Source: Diadema antillarum | Lineage: Eukaryota | Assembly (NCBI RefSeq): GCF_040938485.1 | Contig: NW_027271464.1 | Span: forward strand, 558,001-622,000 | DNA length: 64,000 nt | Direction: 5' to 3' | Part shown: positions 9,068 through 31,460 of the stretch, in pieces | Position numbering within the stretch: position 1 is the stretch's first letter | How the letters are laid out: every line of letters begins with the position of its first letter | Program-made: the position numbers and the translations under genes | Notes under the pieces: generated by a model | Told to the model about the DNA's origin: nothing | The model's input: only the letters and a program-made list of their open reading frames with translations | Databases searched by the model: none

Positions 9068-10671
9068 AAAACAAACAGACTGAAAGCAAACATGAACATG
9101 AGTGAGAATGAGAAATAATGCAGGGAGTAGGGTATAATGTGAGCATGTCTCATTTTTTAACCACTGAATATGCTGGATACACGGCTCAGAGTTGCAAGTT
9201 TACATACAGCATTCTTCCCATTGTAGATTTACGAGAGCCACAAACTTACTGAATATCAATTCATACTGTGACAAATATCAACATGGACATAGGTATGTAA
9301 TGTGGGACTTGCACTAGTATTCCCTATTTCGTACATATCATATATGTGAGTAAATCAAATGTGAAAATCAAGCCACTTTCCCTCTAGAACTTCCTTGCGC
9401 ATATGCTCAGGGCATTACCACAAACAAGCAAACAAACAAAAAGACAAAATCAAACTTTCCTCTATGCACAAATGGTTCCCTTTTCATTTAATGGCTGACA
9501 ACTTATTCATTTTAGCCCAGTAATGAGTTCCATTAGCCCAAAGCAAGCAGACATATGAGTTTATTGAGCATCTATGCCTACTTTATGTCTTCTTCCATGT
9601 GATTAGAAAAGAAATACTCAAAAGCTTTGCAATAATTATTCTAGTGGTAATATGCCCTGGCAACTAGGCTTAAAACTATGAATGGACAACCGGCTTTCCC
9701 TTAAGATTATGATAACTTAAGGAGGGAGGCCATAAGCAGGACTGTACATGTCACAGAACCCGTCTTCTGTTAAATGACCTTTGGATGATACTAAAATATA
9801 ACTTTGACAAATGAATTTACTTTATATATTTTTACAGCTTTTAATGACAAGTTGTAAAGATAAAGGCAGTAAGAATTTGCCCTCGTGCTCTTTAGCACTG
9901 TGTTTGATCTGTCCATGTGAAATGACTAAAAAACTATTTTCACCCGTGGCGTCACCAACTTTCCTCAAAGCTCTGACAATGGGGTGCTTGAACAGACCGC
10001 TTCAATGAGTGGCAAGATTGCACATGTTTGTTTGCACAAAGGGTGGGGGCATCAGGAATGAAAGGGAAAAGAAGTCAAATCTCTTTGACCTTGAATCACT
10101 AAATTTTACACATTTCAAGATAACCATTGCCTGGTACTATTAACATGGTTACACTGGTACCATTGTCTCCCCTGCAGCATGACAACAAGTTATTTACCAA
10201 GTAATCATTTACACATTAATAGTCGAACATCTTGGATCAACGACAGCAACAACATCAAAACCCCAACTACTTTTTGCTGGCAACAGTGAGGGAAAGGTTG
10301 GGTAAAAAAAGTCAGCTTCCCTTTTCTTTGGCTGAACGATTCATTCAATTGGAGTTATTTCGCTCCGAATATCATCTATAAAACACAATTAGCACAGTTC
10401 CACTGATGTCATTGTCTGGCCTTTCACAAATCATACCTACTTCTCCTGCCTGAATGAATTGGTTAGAATGGCTGGAGGCAAATTTGGGTCAACTTCAGTA
10501 CAAATGATCAGTCTCACTTTGTGCAAGAGAATATTTTACTATCTCAATGGTGAACAAAACATCTAAATCGGCACACTCTCATGCTCAAATGCAACAGCTA
10601 TAATACTTTTATGTATCATACTTTGATAAATCTTTTCATATGAGTTCTGAAAGAGTGACAGAAACAGCCTA

Positions 10672-15029: not shown

Positions 15030-15443
15030 CAGTTCTTTCACTTTCATCTTGCTCTGCTCCACTCTAGCTTGCATCTTCTTCTTGGTTTCCTCAAATTCAA
15101 ATTTCTCTGCCTTCTTCCTCGCCCTCCGAAGCAGACCCACGGCCACGCCCCCTTGCTTGAGCAAGGCGTAACCTAGTTTCACATGGAACGCCTCCTCGCG
15201 CATGCGCTTACTCCCACGCCTCTGCCGCTGGTTGCTCCCTGCACCGTGAGCCGAGCTGGAAAATGAATGCAGGCATGTCCAGCAGGTTGGAATACTGCCC
15301 TCACGGGGTCTCTGTTTTGACCGTGGGTCCTGCAGGCCACAGCCATGGATGTAGTCCAGTCCTGTCACACTCGTCCACACTGGATTTAGTCTGATTCCAT
15401 GACCTCTGACCCTGGTCAGTGTTGCTAGTCTTGTCCAAGACAT
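15030..15443 (-). CDS. CRLS1: Cardiolipin synthase, coding exon 1 of 6 (join 15030-15443, 14296-14433, 12081-12210, 10850-11004, 7577-7668, 6790-6877; 338 aa)
   Basis: ATG in GCCAAGATG context with an in-frame upstream TGA. Arg/Ser-rich N-terminus resembling a mitochondrial presequence. Ends ...KVKEL|gtgagg (phase 0) and joins RENIFTIPN. The N-terminal part is not conserved, so it is assigned from the splice junction. Confidence 0.8.
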
Positions 15444-16429
15444 CTTGGCAGCACTTGTCTCCCATCAATGAACAATTCTGTGATTAATCCATCTGCTGAC
15501 AGAACGGTATTTTAAGTAGAATAAAGGGGATTATTTGTCAAGAACGTAGTTCACAAATTTGTCTATTACAATTTGAAATAAAAATCCTGCATCAAGGTTC
15601 CACCTCCCATGCAAAAATTTGACCGCATGCCAAAGGCATTTATAATAGTGAAGCATAGGCTACTACTTATACTATGTATTCCAGTGGCTGAATTTTGGAT
15701 GGCTCTATATTTGAATTATTGGTGGTTTGCTTGGAAGAGTTTTGAAAAGTTTTGAAGAGAAATCCAGTATAAGTCTACTAGTCATCAACCACCTATTCAT
15801 ATATATCAGTTGACCACCCTCGCGCAATGGCTCTCTCGCGTATAAAATCAAAAGTAGACGGGGCACAATACGCCGGAACATTCGAACATGAATACAAATC
15901 AAGAGAAATTAGGGGGATACAGGTAAATAACCTGAGGAAACAGAGGAGGAAAAAGAAGTGAAGAAAATCCTCATTAGTAATACACGTTATTCTTGTTAAC
16001 ACGCATTTGCCCATTCACTCGATTTACTAACCCCAGGGCGCTCCTCGTACACAGTTATACAGTGAACGCTTTGTGTTTGGGCTGGTCGCAGTTATGGATT
16101 TACGTGCTTTTGAATGGGAAAATGGGCGGACGATTAAAATGATGAGCTTGCGCAGGTGTTCAGGAAAAAATGTCACTTGTGTTTGTTGCCAAGAGTTCCG
16201 AGTGTATGGTACGAGTCAACAATCTGAGCACAGGATATGAATCTGTGGTATTTTCTGTCTTGAGTGGAATGAAATTAAGGTGAAACTGAAGGATATTTTC
16301 TAAGATACAAGGTATTTTATCAAAAAGTGGTCAATGAGTAGTAGGTCCAACTTGAACTTTATTCAGGAGTTTAATAGTTTTAGTAGTAGCAGTACTCAAG
16401 AAGCTATCCCCCGTGGTCACCTCAAGAGC

Positions 16430-18420
16430 AGCAACAAAGAGATTAATGCAGTGATTAACTGTCATAGTTTGCGCAGAAAAGCTGCTGTAATGAACAGTTT
16501 AATTTTATAGAAGTAGAAAAACCAGATATTCTTATTGAGACTGAATCCTGGCTTGACCCATCCATCAAATCAGTAGAGATTTTCCACCCTACCTCCAGAT
16601 CTTTAGAAAGGACAGGAACTCCCATGGTGGGGGTGTCTTCATCGGGATAAATAAGGCCATCCCTAGTTTTGAGAGGACTGATCTAGACTCTTGATTCCGA
16701 ACAGATTTGGTGTCAAGCCAATCTCCAAGGTCACGTATTATTAATAGGCAGTTTTTATCGACCACCTGATTCAAAACTGTCTCCCCTCGGGGAGTTAGAA
16801 ACACGCATCTCTAGAATCAATGCTTCTTCATGATCACCACACATCATCCTTGGAGGTGAGTTCAGTGTTGCGGGTATAAATTGGTCTAACGATGTACATA
16901 GTGAACCAAAGGGTCCTCTTCAGGAAGCTTGATAGTAAGTCTGATCTCAAATGATCATCTCACTCAGAAAGTCGACTTCCCCACTAGATGTGATGAAACC
17001 TCCGGCACGGAGAATACACTAGATTTATTATTAACTACTCACCCGGATTCAATCTCAGATGTACCACCTCGCAGTGGGATTTAGTGATCATTCTATCATT
17101 CATGCAAATCTCTGTGTAAAGATTAATGTATTTAGTAAAGTTCCCCGTAAAATACCCCTGTGGAAGAAAGCAAACTGTGAGCACCTCAAGGGACTGGGTG
17201 GAAAACTTCAAGATGATTTTTTTTTATTCCAAACCTGATATGAGATCTGTTGAAGAGAATTGGACATGGTTAAGGAATTCTTTGAATAATATTGTCACAA
17301 AGCATGTACTGCATAAGCTTATTAGGGGTCGTGTTCGCCCCCCATGGTTTTCAAGCAAACTCAAACATCTTTGCAGTAAAAAAGAAAAGTTTTATATCAG
17401 AGCTAAGAAAAGCGGTTTGAAGACTGATTGGAATAAATTCATCAAGGTGCAGGAATTTGTTGATTGTTCTATCAGACGCGCCCACAGGCAGTATGTTGCT
17501 CATATTTTAGAGGAAGAGAATCCCAAGGCTTTCTGGAGATATATAAAGTCTAAATGGATAAATAATATAGGTGTTCAGATGTTGAAGATACACAATGATC
17601 TTGTGACAGGGGATATGGAAAAAGCAGAAATATTTGCAAAGCATTTCCAGAATGTTTTTGCCATGGAAGATACTGATTCCCAACTTCCGGATCTACCAGA
17701 TAGTCCATATCCTGACATGCTCCCCATCAGAGTTGATTTAGAAGGTGTTAAGAAGTTGTTACTTGATATCAGCACAACAAAAGCTATAGGACCTGATCTG
17801 ATCCAGAACCAAGTTCTCAAGATCGCAGCTGAAGAGTTATCCCAATCCTCCAGTTCATCTTTCAACAATCGCTGGACACAGGCGACCTTCCTCTTGACTG
17901 GAGGAGAGCTAACATCACCCCCCTGTTTAAGAAAGGTTCAATCACTGATCCAGCAAATTATCGCCCCATTTCTTTGACGAGCACCTGTTGCAAACTTCTG
18001 GAGCATATAATCGATAGTAATTTGATGAAGCATCTCAGTAAAGAATAACATCCTCGCGGAAAATCAACATGCCTTCCGGAAACATCAGTCGTGTGAATCT
18101 CAACTCATTCTGACAATTAATGATCTGGCTAAGAGTCTCGACACTAATACAATAATAGATCTGGTCGCCTTGGATTTCTCCAAAGCTTTTGACAGTATTC
18201 CTCACAAAAGACTACTTCACAAGCTGGAGTTTTACGGCATTCATCACGGCGTAAAGCAATGGATATCAGCCTTCCTGACCAAGCGTCTTCAGCATGTGTG
18301 CATCAACGGGAAGTGTTCCGATTGGCACCCTGTTCTAAGTGGTACTCCGCAAGGGATGGTTCTTGGACCACATTTCTTCCTTCTTTTTGTCAATGATATC
18401 CATTTCAGGCCATTTGCCAA
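16430..18420 (+). mobile_element. Degenerate non-LTR retrotransposon (CR1/RTE-X group) ORF2, 5' part: APE endonuclease and RT
   Basis: ETESWLD, RKDRNSHGGGVF, NPKAFWRYIK, GPDLIQNQVLK, LDFSKAFDSIPHKRLLHKL, SGTPQGMVLGP, FVNDI..FRPFAN (degraded FADD); many frameshifts and stops. Confidence 0.92.
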
Positions 18421-18541
18421 TCTCAAAAAAAAAAAAAAAAATTTACTTAATACCCGGACTTTCAGGAAAACAACCGAAAATTACCTAAATACCACACCCA
18501 CTAATATATACACTGTATACACCTTGGGGGACAGCGGGCCC

Positions 18542-19531
18542 CTAAGCATACAAATGTACAGCGTTTGCATAGGTGGTCTGCATGACATCAGGCAGAGCCA
18601 TCCCCCGAACCCTGGCCATGTGCTGCCCCACATCCCCCAGATACACGGGAGTGTTGTACTGACACTCCGCGTGCAGCTTGAGATGCGGGGAGTCGGTCTC
18701 TAGCAGCAGCCGGGTAAGGTGGATTTCCCTCACTGATTGGAGTTGGTCTCGGTTGAAGGACTGAATCAGCCCCAAGACCCCGAAATAGCAGTGAGGGAAG
18801 GCAGCTACCCAGGCCCGAACCATACCGGCATCCCCACTAAAGGAGTGTAGATGAACTCGCTGGTGAGCGAGATACTTCTTCTTTAGGAGCCGGATGGCCA
18901 GCCGGTTTACAGTGCTGCCACACAGGTCTGCTGCGGCACCTCGAAGGTACATGACGAGGATACGCCCCAAGGTCCCCAGTGAAAGAATACGGTTAAACAA
19001 CTCCTCCTGAGGGCACCAGAGATGTTTTAGTGCCGAGAAGTCGAAACCAACCTCACTTATGGCAGACACTCGGGGGTTGCAGAGAAGCCTGAGGAATCCA
19101 TCCCACTGGGCTGGCGTGTAGATTGCTGCCTTTTCAATGGATCCCTCCTGCCACCTTAAAATGGGGACCACGCCTCATCGACCTCATGAGGTCATTTTCA
19201 AAATCCAGGTGGGGGGAACCGCTCTGGATTGCAGAAGTTCAGGACCGCCCCCGTGATTGGAAATGGGTGGTTGGGTCCGCGGCCGGTGGTCATGATCCCT
19301 GGCTGGTGGGCCACCAACTGGAGCCGGTCTAGATGGTAATGCGTATCGAACCCGACCACCCGTTTAGTTCTTGGAGGTTCCCGAGGCGCGGTTGTGGCCA
19401 GTGCCGGTGTTGAAGTATCGGGCACTGCTGTCTCTGCATCCTCAACTGCCTCTGCAGGTAAGGGAGCCTGTGCTGGTGGGCCTGGCTCACCAATTACCTC
19501 CGCGACAGCCGCCCTCTGTTGTGTGGACAAC
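18542..19531 (-). pseudogene. Intronless TatD-family metal-dependent nuclease sequence, frameshifted
   Basis: Motifs in order across three frames: FDTHYHLDR, GAVLNFCNP, VAGGIH, ISEVGFD, LVMYLRG, VHLHSFSG, FPHCYFG, LLLETDSPHL, TTYANAVHLY*. Frameshifts near 19200 and 19136. Pro/Ala-rich linker upstream. Confidence 0.85.
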
Positions 19532-19574
19532 CTGACTGTCCCACAGAAATGCAAAAATAAAACAAATATTTTAT

Positions 19575-20745
19575 AGAAATAATGATTTGATCATTTGTGG
19601 GGGAGATTGGAATACACCGCAAAACCCTCAAATAGATACTAGGGGCGTTTCTCAAAAATGCAAGCTTCTACAACCCTTTCAAATATTTATTCAAACAAAC
19701 AAATTGATTTGTTTCAATATGAAAGAATCAAAAAGGCATTGCCACAGGTGTGGTTTGATTATTTGTGTAACAGGCAATGTACCCGAGATGTTTTGTTCAA
19801 TAAAGAATTGTTTCATATAAATACTGGGGATATAATTGAATTGGTAGCTTTAAAAACAAAACAGTTTTATTCGCTACTGCTGGATGAAAATAAATCTGAG
19901 TTAAGTGTGATATACAAATTTGTACTTTTGGACAAAAATATTACATACCTCAAGAATTTGATTGGAAGGTGTTGTTTGATTTCCAGTTTGGAAAATTATC
20001 TAATAATAAAAAAAAAAGCAATAAGTTTTAAGTTATTAGAATCTGTAGAATCTCACCATTTAAAGAAATTTAGTGAAATGAAAAATTATGTCTGACATGA
20101 TTTGTACAAGATGCAGCAAAACTGAATCGATTTGGCATGTTATGTTATATTGCCCAGATACAAGTTATATTGGGAAAAAATATCAAATTTTATATGCGCA
20201 TATTTTCATAAAATCACTGTAAATGAGCGAATGATATTAACAGGATTCAATGTAAGAGATAAATCTTTGATGTTGTTGAATTGATATTAGTTTTTGCCCA
20301 ATATACAATATTTTCGATTGTATATACTTAGCAATTATACCACAAAAGCAACGAAAGTATACGCATTATTGACAGATTTTAGAACAGAGCTCATTATGAA
20401 TTTGAAATTTTTGGTTTAAAAAAAGCTACATGTACTTGACTTCACGAAAAGGCAACTTTACGAATTAGAGCAGAAGTTGAATCACAAAATTTATATTTGA
20501 TTGGCCTGGGATGCAGAAATTAATATGTTTAGGTATATGTCACACTCAGCAAGTATCTTGGATATATTTGAAGTATACTTTCACCAGAGGAATCGAAATT
20601 CATGTGCTGATATAATTTTGACAATTAATTGTTCGTAACCTTATTTTCTACATTCATACATCTTGCTCTCTGTATGTTTTTTGTGAACTTTTCTAGATCT
20701 GAAATGAAATAAAGTCCCTCGAAGGAGGATAAAGAAAAAAAAAAT
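19575..20745 (+). mobile_element. Internally deleted L1/Tx1-type retrotransposon fragment with poly(A)
   Basis: IICGGDWNTPQNPQID (L1-type endonuclease) jumps to ORF2 C-terminal sequence (IKKALPQVW; ESIWHVMLYCP cysteine/histidine-motif remnant). AATAAA near 20708 and an A-run near 20735-20744. Confidence 0.7.
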
Positions 20746-20819
20746 AATTGCCGGTTTTGGGCCAGGCATATATGCCGCACGGGCAAACATATATATCCAT
20801 GTGTTACTTTATACAACAG

Positions 20820-21670
20820 TACAATGGTCACACCGCTGGGGTATGAAATTTAATCCTTCTAAATGTGAATCAATGCGTGTCACCAGGAAAAGAGTTCCAG
20901 GCAGTACAATGTACATCATAAAACATTCTTGGCATCACCCTCGAAGAGTCAAAGCAAGTTAAGTATCTTGGCATTAATATTCAAAATGATCTGTGCTGGA
21001 ACAGCCAGACCCACCGAGCAACAACGAAAGCATCGGTTTTTTTAAACTTCCTCAGACATAATTTTTCAAACTGTTCAACATCTGTGAAGGAAAGGATATA
21101 TTTAACCCTTGTTCATCCTCATCTTGATTAAATGCTACTACTAGTACTACTGCTTGGGATCCATGGACTAACAAGAATATTTCCTCCATCGAACAAGTTC
21201 AAAGACAGGCTGCTCGTTTTGTTTACAAACACATACGACAAAGAAGCAAGTGTCACCCAGTTGCTTAGTTCGCTCAAATGGAACTCACTCTGACACATAT
21301 GGGAAATACACCGACTATCCTGTTTTCACAAGATGCTCGGCAAGGAAATCAACATACATCATACAGACTATATTTACCCTAAACCGGATAGAAGTAGACG
21401 GGGGCATTCAAATTAGTTCGAGGTACCAACTAGCAACACAGATATGTACTGGAATTCTTTCTTCCCTCAAACCACAAGGACATGGAATAGCCTTCCCCAA
21501 TGTGTAACTGTAATCTCTCACATTAACTCAGCTACAGCTACTTTTAAGACCATGGTTTCAAAATATATTCTCCCAAATTGAGTCCACCCTCTGCCGCCAT
21601 CTCCAGTTTAAACTTCGCTTGGGGTCTTTTGGAGGATCACTACCATGTACAACTGTACCAAGTACCACGA
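20820..21670 (+). mobile_element. 3' part of the same or a related CR1/RTE-X-group LINE
   Basis: WSHRWGMKFNPSKCESMRVTRK, KYLGINIQNDLCWN, TAWDP..IEQVQRQAARFV, SFFPQTTRTWNSLP; ends in a short GTACCA tandem tail. Confidence 0.85.
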
Positions 21671-23343: not shown

Positions 23344-24933
23344 AGCTGCGTTTACACCATGTTCCTGGCAACCACAGCAGCTCCTTCTTCTTCTTCTTCC
23401 GGGTGAAGTACTGACCTCTGGAAAGAGTATTTTCGTACTTTGTGCAGTGCTGAAACTAGTGTGCCACGCTGCATTGTTTGATGCTTTTTTTTTGTTGTTA
23501 CAATTGATATAATATACACTATAAAAAGTAAAAAGTGCTCTTTGTGCAAGTAAAATTAGCTCCTCTTCCAACTAGATTTGACGCAGTGTCACCCCGACCA
23601 GCTGCCTCCTAAACTGTTCGAGGGAAGAAGCAGCTGTCACACTGGTTGGGAGCTGGTTCCAGAAGAGTATGACACTTGGGAAGAAGGAGTTTTGAAAGCC
23701 AGAGGTCCTGCAGAATTGTTGTCGATATTGAGTAGGTCTTCGTCCAGATGATCGTGTTACCGGGTAGATGTAGGGTGGTTCAGGTGGAATAGCAATCAGT
23801 TGATGTAAGATGCGGAACAGCATGATGACTTTCAGCTGGGCCCTTCTTTCTGCAAGAGATTGCCATTTCAAGGAGTGTAGCATTTCACTGACACTGTGTC
23901 GAGGGTGAAAGTCTCCCAGAGTAAACCTAGCGGCACGTCTTTGAACCATTTCAAGCTTCCTGATTTGGTCTTGGCAGTGAGGATCCCAGGCTGTTGATGC
24001 ATATTCAAGGATAGGGCGGACATATGTCACATAGGCTTGTTCTTTTATTTTCTTGGGGCAGCCATGTAGGTTTCTCTGGAGGAATCCTCGTGTGCTGTTG
24101 GCCTTTTTACATGTGTTGTCTACAATGTATATGTGTCTTCCAGCTTAGCTTTGAGTTGATATGTACTCCAAGGTACTTAGCATTGTCCACAACTGGAAGC
24201 TTGACTCCATGAAGAGAATAAGAAGAATGGATGACATTTTTCACCTTGTTGGTCACTCTCAGGACTTCACACTTGGATGGATTGAGGGACATCTGCCACT
24301 TGGTTTCCCACCCTTGGATGTTGGTAAGGTCTTCTTGGAGTCTGTCTGCATCCGTCTGTGAGCTAATGTGTCGGTAAAGGAGACAATCATCTGCAAACAT
24401 TCGAAATTCAGACGTTTCAGGCCACTGTGGCAAAAACGGGATGGACGTGAAACGACGCGGTGAGACGGGATTGTCAAACGTGGGGTGGCAGGCGGTGATT
24501 ACCGTGGATGCCGTGGGCGTGGCCATGTCAGATTTTTAAAATGTCAAAAAATTTGCCACGTACGGCAGTCCCAGTGCTAATGAGGAATTTTGTATGCCAT
24601 GATAAAACGGGGTCAACGCTACAAAACATGGTGGCACGTACACTGTAATGGACCGTATTAAAGACAAACTGGAGGTGGTCCGTAACGTAGGGCCATAATA
24701 GGGGGATGCGACAGAAAATATCGATTGTCTAGCCTGATCAGATGCCGTGAGAATTGAGAATAGCGTCTAATATAGAGCTATGTTCACGGGGGCGAGGGCT
24801 GGAACGACCAAGACTAGTCTAGATTACGAAGGGGAAAAACAGGAGAATGTCTCATCTACCCACAGCGCACTGCATTTCAGGCAAAGGGGGCCGGGGCTGC
24901 CATGGCCACTAGGAACATGGTGTAAATGCAGCA
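23344..24933. mobile_element. PIF/Harbinger-like non-autonomous element containing the LINE above
   Basis: Imperfect TIRs AGCTGCGTTTACACCATGTTCCT / AGGAACATGGTGTAAATGCAGCA with TAA on both flanks. Confidence 0.6.
23386..24420 (-). mobile_element. 5'-truncated CR1/RTE-X-group LINE (RT C-terminus, 3' UTR, (GAA)n tail) in GNPNAT1 intron 1
   Basis: FRMFADDCLLYR...NPSKCEVLRVT...KYLGVHI and YVRPILEYASTAWDP...VQRRAARF...SFFPSVILFWNQLP; tail GAAGAAGAAGAAG. Confidence 0.92.
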
Positions 24934-30904: not shown

Positions 30905-31460
30905 TTGTACCTTAGTGAGTACTTTCACCTCCAACTGGTGGCTTCTTCAGACTGTGTCGTAGATGGCGGTGTGACGCTGGATGTGAGAGAATGGTATCAT
31001 ATAAATGCGAAAGGATATATTGGCCCGAGTTTCTGTTCATTGTGTTAGGGGTTTCCTGATGTGAATTGCCTCCCTTATCCATCTTGATGGGTGATGATCT
31101 TCTCTTGTAAGAATATGGCTCTTGTTCCATTGGATGGAATGGTTATTGATAGCAACTTGATCCCCCACGGCTGATTTGTGAATGATATTGTCTGCCGATT
31201 ATTTTCTAGATCGAGTGTAAGGGATTTGGCTGATGTTTCTAACTTCATCCTCATGCTCGCCTCTTCTTATACCAAATTGTCTGCCTGTCTCCCCAATGTA
31301 TGTAGCTTTACATTGCAGGGAATCTCATATAATACAACTCCTGCTACGTCGTCTACTTTCCGTTTGTCTTTTGGGTTGACCAGTAGGCTTCTTCTGGTTT
31401 TATGGGGCTTGACAGCAGTGGAAACTTCAAACTCCTTGATGATATTCTTGAGATCGTAAA
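30905..31460 (-). mobile_element. Penelope-like element 3' fragment (GIY-YIG endonuclease region)
   Basis: Degenerate LVNPKDK..VAGVVLYEIPC and NTMNRNSGQYILSHLYDTIL, typical of the PLE C-terminus, followed by a hammerhead motif. Confidence 0.8.
30914..30953 (-). ncRNA. Minimal type I hammerhead ribozyme (Penelope-associated)
   Basis: AGU-CUGAAGA-A-GCC(A)CCA-GU-UGG(A)GGU-GAAA-GUAC-UC-ACU: core intact, palindromic AGUACU in place of helix III, short stem I. Confidence 0.75.

What the first reader, a model, noticed from the sequence alone, without database searches (positions are those of the whole stretch)
18422..19575. Intronless TatD nuclease embedded in retroelement DNA: candidate mobile-element-borne TatD system
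Seen: a GC-rich, complete TatD TIM-barrel sequence (DTHYH, GIH, SEVGFD, HLHSF, ETDSP) with no introns, two frameshifts and one metal-ligand His changed to Tyr (a single CAC>TAC step). It is preceded by a Pro/Ala-rich linker and an acceptor-like site (19531) and followed by a T-run. Established: TatD proteins are metal-dependent 3'-5' exonucleases/AP endonucleases, and the canonical animal TATDN genes are multi-exon housekeeping genes. I know of no described retrotransposon clade that carries TatD but cannot verify this. Inference: the head-to-head junction with an L1/Tx1 piece that begins mid-endonuclease and ends in poly(A) is the geometry expected from twin-priming 5' inversion. That would place TatD in sense, upstream of ORF2 on the source RNA, i.e. 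an L1/Tx1 element with a TatD-bearing ORF1. Alternatively it is cargo of another large mobile element. The missing TSD weakens the single-event model.
Basis: partly seen in the sequence, partly recalled or inferred. Interest (0 to 1): 0.8.

Follow-up and report, generated by a model that had tools for sequence, protein, structure and literature searches.

The report
Dead TatD gene from Gypsy retrotransposon
The broken TatD nuclease gene is a decayed piece of the third gene of a sea-urchin Ty3/Gypsy LTR retrotransposon, one of a large family in echinoderms and molluscs that carries a conserved TatD nuclease and that I could not find described in the literature.

Summary
Window 18542-19552 (minus strand) is an intronless, GC-rich TatD pseudogene with at least two frameshifts, an in-frame stop and a His-to-Tyr change at an invariant metal ligand.

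The L1/Tx1 ORF1 twin-priming model does not hold.

The genome is Diadema antillarum. It has at least 100 TatD matches. Every intact copy with enough flank is ORF3 of a Ty3/Gypsy LTR retrotransposon: gag (CCHC), then pol (PR-RT-RNaseH-integrase-PHD), then ORF3. ORF3 holds a novel zinc-finger/helical module, a disordered linker and TatD.

Four full-length elements (7.0-12.6 kb) have 100% identical LTRs, 4-bp target duplications, a primer-binding site and a polypurine tract.

The window copy is a remnant of such an element. It was inserted antisense into a CR1-like reverse-transcriptase ORF at GTAC. It keeps 73 bp of its 5' LTR (20747-20819). An A-tailed L1-like fragment interrupts it, and its 3' LTR is deleted.

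The same architecture occurs in zebra mussel. A starfish gene model joins integrase, PHD and TatD. TatD metal ligands are invariant or nearly so across 42 sequences. About 1,550 protein clusters match strongly.

No paper in the searchable library links TatD to retrotransposons. Other first-stage notes from this scan had already flagged TatD in LTR elements elsewhere in this genome.

The parts
15222..18401 (+). Left part of a CR1-like non-LTR retrotransposon. It holds the end of the endonuclease and the N-terminal half of the reverse transcriptase, and breaks off right after the codons for ...VNDI. This is the host into which the LTR element was inserted.
   Evidence: RVT_1 hit at 18170-18430, E 4.9e-13. 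96.6% identical to L040:1-3149. In L040 the RT reads on for 38 more codons to ...INTMV before the LTR.
18402..18541 (-). 3' untranslated internal region of the LTR element, between the ORF3 stop and the polypurine tract. It includes the T-run at 18424-18440. It is cut off about 45 bp before the polypurine tract and 3' LTR, which are deleted here.
   Evidence: Alignment with L035, L042, L044 and L040. The homology limit of all copies is at 18401/18402. L040:3150-3757 (about 114 bp of RT, the 3' LTR and the PPT region) has no counterpart in the window.
18542..19552 (-). Remnant of ORF3, a pseudogene. Stop codon at 18542-18544. TatD domain at 18545-19353. Pro/Ala-rich linker at about 19354-19480. 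Last helix of the conserved N-module at about 19481-19552. Frameshifts near 19216 and 19136, and probably near 19535. In-frame TGA at 19134-19136. His-to-Tyr at 18947-18949. The 5' end is truncated at 19552.
   Evidence: Other copies extend 250-900 bp further upstream. In the tree it pairs with L035 (SH-aLRT 99) inside the echinoderm ORF3 clade.
19553..20746 (+). A-tailed fragment of a non-LTR (L1/Tx1-like) repeat, with an A-run at 20733-20746. It sits in the opposite orientation inside the LTR element, between LTR position 73 and mid-ORF3, where the rest of the 5' LTR, the leader and the 5' part of ORF3 should be.
   Evidence: At least 43 genomic matches. Most cover 19709-20740 at 82-88% identity. 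No Pfam hit, so the L1/Tx1 assignment itself is not verified.
20747..20819 (-). First 73 bp of the element's 5' LTR. On the minus strand it starts TGTTGTATAAAG at 20819.
   Evidence: Alignment with the LTR starts of L035 (both LTRs), L040 and L044. It is preceded by target DNA and not by a polypurine tract, so it is a 5' LTR.
20820..20823 (.). GTAC, the surviving right-hand copy of the 4-bp target-site duplication.
   Evidence: The window reads ...caaca|gtacaatggtcacacc. L040 reads ...aatacaatggtac|LTR end. Removing the element and one GTAC restores the RT reading frame ...INTMVQWSHRWGMKFN.
20820..21500 (+). Right part of the same CR1-like reverse-transcriptase ORF (QWSHRWGMKFNPSKC...).
   Evidence: ORF 20801-20962 and the ORFs after it. 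Continuity with the L040 RT.

Best explanation
The window's TatD sequence is a dead, 5'-truncated remnant of ORF3 of a Ty3/Gypsy LTR retrotransposon of Diadema antillarum.

History of the window copy. The element was inserted in antisense into the reverse-transcriptase ORF of a CR1-like non-LTR element at a GTAC site. An A-tailed L1-like fragment later took the place of most of its 5' LTR, its leader and the front of ORF3. A deletion then removed the polypurine tract, the 3' LTR and about 114 bp of the host RT. The copy has no function now.

The living family. Elements are built as LTR, long leader, gag (CCHC), pol (protease, RT, RNase H, integrase with a C-terminal PHD finger), ORF3, polypurine tract, LTR. 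ORF3 has a variable disordered N-terminus, then a conserved module of about 135 aa (a CPxxGC-x9-H-x3-H zinc finger plus a helical bundle with no detectable known fold), then a Pro/Ala-rich linker, then a complete TatD TIM-barrel with all metal ligands.

What is shown: the architecture, young intact copies, conservation of the catalytic residues across two phyla, and moderate purifying selection.

What is inferred. ORF3 may be translated from an env-like spliced subgenomic mRNA, because a pyrimidine tract and AG precede its ATG in 4 of 5 elements. It probably makes a zinc-finger-tethered, metal-dependent nuclease. TatD enzymes are 3'-5' exonucleases and AP endonucleases, and TATDN2 degrades the RNA strand of RNA:DNA hybrids. 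The likeliest target is the element's own reverse-transcription or integration intermediates: trimming ends, clearing RNA remnants, or processing abasic sites left after host deaminase attack on the cDNA.
For: Family census: at least 101 six-frame TatD matches in the genome, many inside open frames of 430-1025 aa. A Pfam HMM scan finds 12 complete, uninterrupted TatD domains.

Linkage: gag, pol and ORF3 lie on one strand in L031-L034, L036, L038 and L039.

Intact elements: four full-length elements have 100% identical LTRs (196-317 bp), 4-bp TSDs (GTAC, GTTA, GTAT, GAAA), TG...CA ends (three of the four; C590 ends ...TTTA), a TGGCG... primer-binding site and an A/G-rich polypurine tract.

Derivatives: L042 carries gag, part of the protease and ORF3. 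L035 is LTR-ORF3-LTR, about 3 kb.

Window anatomy.

Other phyla: Dreissena polymorpha has the same four-part architecture. An Acanthaster gene model joins integrase, PHD and TatD. Named homologues come from 4 echinoderm and more than 10 mollusc genera.

Conservation: C11, C16, H26, H30 and the TatD residues H196, H198, D200, D295 and H326 are invariant. E291, H360, E409 and D411 are at least 90% conserved in 42 sequences that are 28-46% identical to the reference.

Structure: AF2 model pLDDT 88, with best PDB matches TATDN3, E. coli TatD and S. aureus DNase (E about 1e-13, TM 0.75-0.84).

Selection: dN/dS is about 0.4 at dS 0.10 within one family.

Abundance: 1,550 clusters at E <= 1e-30.
Against: No RNA data could be found, so expression and splicing of ORF3 are untested.

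No biochemical evidence exists for any member. The substrate and the role in the element's life cycle are pure inference.

The C633-type family (at least 6 copies) lacks the zinc-finger module, so that module is not indispensable.

The subfamily closest to the window (L035, L041-L044) consists only of decayed or internally deleted copies. No autonomous partner above 62% protein identity was seen, so its parent element is not identified.

The census of linkage rests on 7 loci with long flanks.
Confidence: 0.92

Rival explanations
1. TatD is, or was, ORF1 of an L1/Tx1-type non-LTR retrotransposon. The head-to-head junction with the L1-like piece would then be a twin-priming 5' inversion of one insertion event.
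For: The TatD remnant abuts an A-tailed non-LTR fragment in the opposite orientation at 19552/19553.
Against: The junction is seen only in the window and its near-identical locus L040. Every other copy of the TatD unit continues into ORF3 N-terminal sequence instead. The L1-like repeat has at least 43 other matches, none of them next to a listed TatD match. The TatD unit carries its own LTR start, TSD, PPT and 3' LTR. Intact TatD ORFs always follow a Gypsy pol.
Confidence: 0.02
2. It is a processed pseudogene of a host TATDN gene, retroposed by a LINE.
For: It has no introns, it is decayed, and it lies among retroelements.
Against: There are more than 100 copies with deep subfamilies. The homopolymer after the gene is T on the sense strand, and it is an internal tract shared with other copies. 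The upstream sequence is the ORF3-specific N-module and linker, not a host 5' UTR. The host's own TatD gene is a separate multi-exon locus, at C1035:144176-146950 and C90:120656-123404. The domain scores far below every curated TatD equivalog cut-off.
Confidence: 0.01
3. The TatD ORF is a passenger. It would be a once-captured host gene that rides in these LTR elements without contributing to their replication, or that serves the host.
For: Internally deleted derivatives that keep ORF3 but lose RT and integrase have multiplied (L035, L042, L037-type). That shows ORF3-bearing RNAs are mobilised in trans. No functional data exist.
Against: Architecture and catalytic residues are kept across echinoderms and molluscs at about 30% identity. 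The TatD tree separates echinoderm from mollusc rows, which points to very long retention. A useless 1.3-2.7 kb ORF would be lost quickly from a retroelement. dN/dS is about 0.4.
Confidence: 0.05
4. It is bacterial contamination or a recent horizontal transfer of a bacterial tatD gene.
For: The best solved-structure sequence match is E. coli YcfH (9e-13). Some database relatives are labelled as MAG proteins of Sedimenticola or Thiodiazotropha.
Against: The sequence is nested inside eukaryotic retroelements on megabase contigs. The MAG-labelled proteins sit on 1-11 kb contigs, and at least one of them (P0013) carries the eukaryotic ORF3 N-module. That fits DNA of the clam host binned by mistake. 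Bacterial-like TatDs form the outgroup in the tree.
Confidence: 0.005

Closest known systems
Ty3/Gypsy (Metaviridae) LTR retrotransposons with a third ORF, such as the env-bearing errantiviruses (Drosophila gypsy)
   Same: LTR-gag-pol-ORF3-LTR layout. PR-RT-RNaseH-IN order. 4-bp TSD. ORF3 sits just after pol and is preceded by an acceptor-like pyrimidine tract plus AG, as expected for a spliced subgenomic mRNA.
   Different: ORF3 encodes a soluble zinc-finger plus TatD metal-dependent nuclease, not a membrane glycoprotein. The integrase ends in a PHD finger rather than a chromodomain.
Cellular TatD-family nucleases: E. coli TatD, YcfH and YjjV; human TATDN1, TATDN2 and TATDN3
   Same: Same TIM-barrel fold (TM 0.75-0.84) and the same metal ligands: HxH, Glu, His, His, Glu/Asp. 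TATDN2 likewise has a long N-terminal extension before a C-terminal TatD domain (my own knowledge, not tested here).
   Different: Only 15-24% identity to solved structures. Scores lie below every NCBIfam equivalog cut-off. The TE version has no introns, is multi-copy and is fused to an N-module not seen in solved structures. The host's own TatD gene is a separate multi-exon locus.
Accessory nucleic-acid enzymes of retroelements: the dUTPase of some retroviruses and LTR elements, and the esterase and PHD domains of CR1-like ORF1 (Kapitonov and Jurka 2003, cited in PMC6673714)
   Same: A hydrolase and a chromatin-reader domain acquired by a retrotransposon lineage and kept for a long time.
   Different: A different enzyme family, carried in a separate ORF and not inside pol or ORF1. 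No TatD case was found in the literature.
QatD, the TatD-family nuclease of the bacterial Qat anti-phage system
   Same: A TatD nuclease used in a genetic-conflict setting. The TE TatDs hit the QatD model at E 1e-11 to 3e-22.
   Different: Far below the QatD cut-off (43-79 bits against 230). Eukaryotic retroelement context. No Qat partner genes.

Membership tests
TatD_DNase (Pfam PF01026) | Profile match above the gathering score | tested here: met
   Window piece: 93.9 bits against a cut-off of 27. Intact relatives: 103-134 bits.
TatD_DNase (Pfam PF01026) | TIM-barrel fold like solved TatD enzymes | tested here: met
   Tested on the intact relative L034 ORF3, not on the window copy. pLDDT 88. 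Foldseek matches 2y1h, 4p5u and 6l25 at E about 1e-13, TM 0.75-0.84.
TatD_DNase (Pfam PF01026) | Complete set of metal ligands and an open reading frame, meaning a working enzyme | tested here: not met
   Window copy: His-to-Tyr at 18947-18949, at least two frameshifts and an in-frame TGA. The family as a whole meets the feature: the ligands are invariant or at least 90% conserved.
Bacterial TatD, YcfH, YjjV and QatD equivalogs (NCBIfam) | Score above the curated equivalog cut-off | tested here: not met
   TIGR00010: 90-124 bits against 206. TatD: 56-79 against 395. YcfH-type: 48-74 against 438. QatD: 43-79 against 230.
Ty3/Gypsy LTR retrotransposon | Direct LTRs with TG...CA ends, short TSD, PBS and PPT | tested here: met
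   Four full-length elements have identical LTRs, 4-bp TSDs, a TGGCG PBS and a purine-rich PPT; three of the four end in CA and C590 ends ...TTTA. Window: 5' LTR start plus GTAC TSD. The window's 3' LTR is deleted.
Ty3/Gypsy LTR retrotransposon | gag with CCHC, and pol in the order PR-RT-RNaseH-IN | tested here: met
   Pfam zf-CCHC, Retrotrans_gag/PNMA, Asp_protease, RVT_1, RT_RNaseH(_2), Integrase_H2C2 and rve, in that order. None of gag or pol remains in the window copy.
Ty3/Gypsy LTR retrotransposon | Placement in a named Gypsy clade by RT phylogeny | not tested
L1/Tx1 element with a TatD ORF1 | Sense linkage of TatD upstream of an L1/Tx1 ORF2 in several copies | tested here: not met
   No copy shows it. 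The only TatD / L1-like junction is antisense and private to the window and L040.
Processed pseudogene of a host gene | Sense poly(A) tail, flanking TSD of LINE type, and derivation from a host mRNA | tested here: not met
   The homopolymer is T on the sense strand and is internal. The flanks are the element's own UTR and LTR. The family has more than 100 copies.

The most novel reading that the evidence does not exclude
A lineage of Ty3/Gypsy retrotransposons, old enough to be shared by echinoderms and molluscs, depends on its own zinc-finger-tethered TatD nuclease. The nuclease would act as a replication or counter-defence factor, for example by clearing RNA:DNA hybrids or abasic sites from cDNA attacked by the host's expanded AID/APOBEC-like deaminases. 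That would make TatD a new class of retroelement accessory enzyme alongside dUTPase and Env. A further possibility, not tested here, is that animal TATDN2-type genes are related to this ORF3.
Probability: 0.2. Interest if true: 0.8.

Novelty: new variant of a known kind. Interest (0 to 1): 0.6.

Why it matters
LTR retrotransposons are thought to need only gag and pol, with env in some lineages. This family adds a conserved, catalytically intact TatD nuclease and an unknown zinc-finger domain, kept across two phyla and present in young copies. That points to an undescribed step in retroelement replication or in the conflict with host nucleic-acid defences.

It also matters for annotation. Hundreds of invertebrate 'TATDN2', 'YabD-like', 'YcfH-like' and 'mucin-17-like' gene models, and some 'TatD hydrolases' in symbiont MAGs, are probably retrotransposon ORF3s.

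The window copy itself is an ordinary dead fragment. Its value is as a pointer to the family.

Tried and rejected
RNA evidence. The look-up of sequencing runs (kind rna) for the ORF3 of an intact element found no RNA run, only one DNA-type holder with a 0.20 share of words.

Fold of the ORF3 N-module. The model is confident (pLDDT 92), but nothing significant matched: Foldseek against PDB, best E 2.6; ESM Atlas, TM at most 0.41; VIA-align wide, best Z 3.6 with weak XRE/HTH-like rows. This does not prove the fold is new.

Wider linkage census. For the same reason the host multi-exon TatD gene could not be fetched, so no tree against host TATDN1/2/3 was made.

Pol-ORF3 fusion by splicing. I considered whether a GTAAGT donor-like site at the pol stop codon in the C750 and C325 elements could splice pol onto ORF3. 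The exon would still contain the TAA, so I dropped the idea.

First word-based search. A search with a whole ORF3 returned only the protein itself, because low-complexity words saturated the candidate list. Restricting the search to the TatD region solved this.

Pfam on the L1/Tx1-like piece.

Between-family dN/dS. It is saturated.
Full report
OBSERVATION

On the minus strand, window 18542-19552 carries an intronless TatD sequence. Pfam TatD_DNase matches the longest open piece (18542-19171) at E 1.4e-26. The segment is 55-57% GC in a 33-41% GC neighbourhood.

tblastn with the ORF3 of a related copy places the gene in three reading frames. These are 19533-19219, then 19214-19137 followed by an in-frame TGA, then 19135-18545. 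A third probably lies near 19535.

The Tyr at VMYLRG (TAC, 18947-18949) replaces a His that is invariant in 42 relatives.

WHAT THE GENOME SAYS

A six-frame search of the window's own 1.75-Gb assembly gave at least 101 TatD matches. Many have no stop codon and lie at the C-terminal end of open frames of 430-1025 aa. A Pfam-HMM scan found 69 matches, 12 of them complete uninterrupted domains. It also found a separate multi-exon locus (C1035:144176-146950 and C90:120656-123404) that looks like the host's own TatD gene.

One ORF3 is 100% identical to an NCBI 'uncharacterized protein' of Diadema antillarum, so the organism is that sea urchin.

CONTEXT OF INTACT COPIES

I fetched 10-kb flanks for 14 loci. 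In all seven with an intact TatD ORF (L031-L034, L036, L038, L039), the ORF follows two other ORFs on the same strand:
- a gag ORF with a CCHC knuckle and a PNMA/Retrotrans_gag-like capsid;
- a pol ORF with aspartic protease, RVT_1, RT_RNaseH, Integrase_H2C2, rve and a C-terminal PHD finger.

After adding upstream sequence, four elements could be delimited fully:

| Element | Length | LTR | TSD |
|---|---|---|---|
| C590 | 12,061 bp | 276 bp | GTAC |
| C750 | 12,355 bp | 196 bp | GTTA |
| C325 | 12,593 bp | 317 bp | GTAT |
| C633 | 7,044 bp | 280 bp | GAAA |

A fifth, C261, has LTRs of at least 672 bp whose 5' copy runs off the fetched sequence, so its ends and TSD were not determined. In every case the two LTRs are 100% identical over their compared length. 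The four delimited elements have a TGGCG... primer-binding site and a purine-rich tract before the 3' LTR; three of them end TG...CA and C590 ends ...TTTA.

These are textbook, very young Ty3/Gypsy elements whose third ORF ends in TatD.

Among the 30 best loci with 1.5-kb flanks, 8 show the integrase-PHD end and 20 show the ORF3 N-module just upstream of TatD.

ANATOMY OF THE WINDOW COPY

Homology to the other copies of the window's subfamily (L035, L041-L044; 78-81% DNA identity) runs from 19552 to 18402. Those copies extend further upstream into ORF3.

L035 is a 3-kb LTR-ORF3-LTR derivative. L042 keeps a gag remnant and part of the protease before ORF3. The subfamily therefore consists of internally deleted Gypsy derivatives.

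Downstream of the stop codon, the window aligns with the element's 3' untranslated region.

The window's homology stops at 18402, directly against the codons ...VNDI of a CR1-like reverse transcriptase on the plus strand.

L040 is a 93-97% identical locus on contig C1392. It is either an allelic haplotig or a segmental duplicate. There the RT reads on for 38 more codons to ...INTMV and then meets the end of the 3' LTR. So the window has lost about 608 bp: some RT, the 3' LTR and the PPT region.

On the other side, window 20819-20747 (minus strand) is the first 73 bp of an LTR (TGTTGTATAAAG...). It is flanked by GTAC and then by the RT sequence QWSHRWGMKFN.... Removing the element and one GTAC rejoins the RT frame as ...INTMVQWSHRW....

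Between LTR position 73 and mid-ORF3 lies an A-tailed fragment on the plus strand (19553-20746). It belongs to an independent repeat with at least 43 matches at 82-88% identity. None of them lies next to a listed TatD match apart from the window's near-copy on contig C1392.

The head-to-head junction is therefore a later insertion or deletion event inside an LTR element. It is not a twin-priming inversion.

THE ORF3 PROTEIN

I aligned 42 ORF3 sequences from Diadema, other echinoderms, molluscs and unnamed marine assemblies. They are 28-46% identical to the reference. The alignment shows four parts:
- a variable, low-complexity N-terminus;
- a conserved module of about 135 aa, with invariant Cys, Cys, His, His (CPxxGC-x9-H-x3-H) and an NSPAxLxHWR motif;
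- a Pro/Ala-rich linker;
- the TatD domain.

In TatD the HxH-D motif, the GLD Asp, the HLR His and a Gln are invariant. The metal-binding Glu, the HCF His and the ETD Glu and Asp are at least 90% conserved.

AlphaFold2 models both folded parts confidently (pLDDT 88, and 92 for the N-module alone). The TatD part matches human TATDN3, E. coli TatD and S. aureus DNase (E about 1e-13, TM 0.75-0.84).

The N-module has no significant match in PDB or the ESM Atlas.

By sequence, the domain is nearest to E. coli YcfH (9e-13), then TatD (1e-10) and TATDN3 (4e-8). TATDN1 is not detected. The domain scores far below every NCBIfam equivalog cut-off. It is thus a deep, separate TatD branch and not a recent copy of a host gene.

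Within one Diadema family, dN/dS is about 0.4 at dS 0.10.

In 4 of 5 elements a pyrimidine tract plus AG lies just before the ORF3 ATG. This fits an env-like spliced mRNA, but no RNA data were available to test it.

DISTRIBUTION

Word-based searches found long ORF3-like proteins in these genera:
- echinoderms: Lytechinus, Strongylocentrotus, Acanthaster;
- molluscs: Dreissena, Pinctada, Pecten, Ruditapes, Saccostrea, Ostrea, Haliotis, Elysia, Mercenaria, Mya, Mizuhopecten, Tegillarca and Plakobranchus.

All are uncharacterised or auto-named: YabD-like, YcfH-like, HI_0454-like, TATDN2, mucin-17-like.

The Dreissena locus has the same architecture: gag, then PR-RT-RH, then IN-PHD, then ORF3 with TatD. 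An Acanthaster gene model joins integrase, PHD and TatD.

An exhaustive profile search gave 1,550 representatives (50% clusters) at E <= 1e-30. All of the best 150 scored below 1e-83, and most match both modules.

In a quick ML tree the retroelement TatDs separate from bacterial-like TatDs. The echinoderm rows form one clade (SH-aLRT 94). The window pairs with L035 (99), inside a clade with Diadema C261, Diadema C633 and a Strongylocentrotus protein (97). For that tree the window's protein was read through with X at each break.

MECHANISM

Shown: the window copy is dead. The family is alive in this genome and keeps a catalytically complete TatD.

Established for the TatD family: TATDN2 degrades the RNA strand of R-loops (Jaiswal et al. 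2023, as cited in PMC12754012). From my own knowledge, TatD enzymes are metal-dependent 3'-5' exonucleases and AP endonucleases.

Inferred: ORF3 is a nucleic-acid-tethered nuclease that serves the element. Most likely it acts on reverse-transcription or integration intermediates. Alternatively it is a counter-measure to host attack on cDNA. The PHD finger on the integrase probably reads histone tails to guide integration, by analogy with chromodomains (PMC6673714).

NOVELTY

Eight full-text searches that combined TatD with LTR retrotransposon, Gypsy, retroelement, transposable element and integrase, transposon and sea urchin, Repbase, and retrotransposon alone returned no paper linking TatD to a retroelement. 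A separate search on PHD fingers in Gypsy integrases added none. A survey of mollusc LTR elements does not mention extra ORFs.

Closed-access papers and Repbase notes were not searchable.

Seven other first-stage notes from this same scan had already flagged TatD in LTR elements elsewhere in this genome. I reached the linkage before reading them, and tested it here.

VERDICT

The L1/Tx1 model is refuted, and the mobile-element cargo reading is supported. The window holds an ordinary dead fragment of what looks like an undescribed variant of Ty3/Gypsy retrotransposons with a TatD-encoding ORF3.

Noticed in passing
L037:908-5343 (G000:C71:2752800-2762799), and four more places listed (C429, C2, C598, C1239): A repeated family with gag (CCHC), then a 936-aa ORF that has an aspartic protease but no RT or integrase and runs into a weak TatD-like stretch (27% identity). 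The open frames are 722-1025 aa (four of the five at 1012-1025) with one TAG inside. It looks like an amplified non-autonomous gag-PR-TatD derivative.
   Followed up: partly
L037:8047-8970 (+): A 308-aa ORF about 3 kb downstream of that element has weak APOBEC_N and NAD1 (AID/APOBEC-like) hits, E 2e-4 to 4e-4 and below cut-off. A deaminase gene next to a TatD-bearing retroelement could bear on the counter-defence idea.
   Followed up: no
G000:C1035:144176-146950 (+) and G000:C90:120656-123404 (-): Three Pfam TatD segments (profile positions 1-107, 101-165 and 160-228) spaced about 1.2 kb apart. This is probably the host's own multi-exon TatD gene, present on two contigs.
   Followed up: no
P0013, P0129, P0166, P0169, P0223, P0226: Proteins deposited as 'MAG: TatD family hydrolase' of Sedimenticola or Candidatus Thiodiazotropha (bivalve symbionts) lie on 1-11 kb contigs and group with the retroelement TatDs. 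P0013 carries the ORF3 zinc-finger module. They are probably host retrotransposon DNA binned by mistake.
   Followed up: partly
merged elements C590:1144-3380, C750:968-3323, C325:1076-3687 (L046+L032, L047+L033, L048+L038): The 12-kb elements have a stretch of 2.2-2.6 kb between the 5' LTR and gag with no ORF over 165 aa. That is an unusually long leader of unknown role.
   Followed up: no
merged C750 about 9335-9345 and C325 about 9590-9600: A consensus donor-like AAG|GTAAGT overlaps the pol stop codon, about 75 nt before the acceptor-like tract in front of the ORF3 ATG. Splicing there would not remove the stop codon.
   Followed up: partly
merged C261:5739-6203 (L045+L034): A tandem array of 93-bp units, 90-93% identical, lies inside the gag/pol overlap region of the C261 element.
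   Followed up: no
L040 (G000:C1392:272600-282599) against window 15222-19707: The whole nested composite exists twice at 93-97% identity, with large indels: a 608-bp stretch absent from the window, about 1.1 kb extra in L040, and about 8 kb extra further on. L041 and L044 are 97% identical over 9.4 kb, and L016 and L017 gave identical matches. The assembly may hold uncollapsed haplotypes, so copy counts may be inflated up to two-fold.
   Followed up: partly
window 23572-24030 (-): The C-terminal part of another CR1/Jockey-type reverse-transcriptase ORF (RPILEYAS...VQRRAARF...), on the opposite strand.
   Followed up: no
window 30914-30953: Another first-stage note reports a minimal hammerhead ribozyme at the end of a Penelope-like fragment. 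I did not examine it.
   Followed up: no
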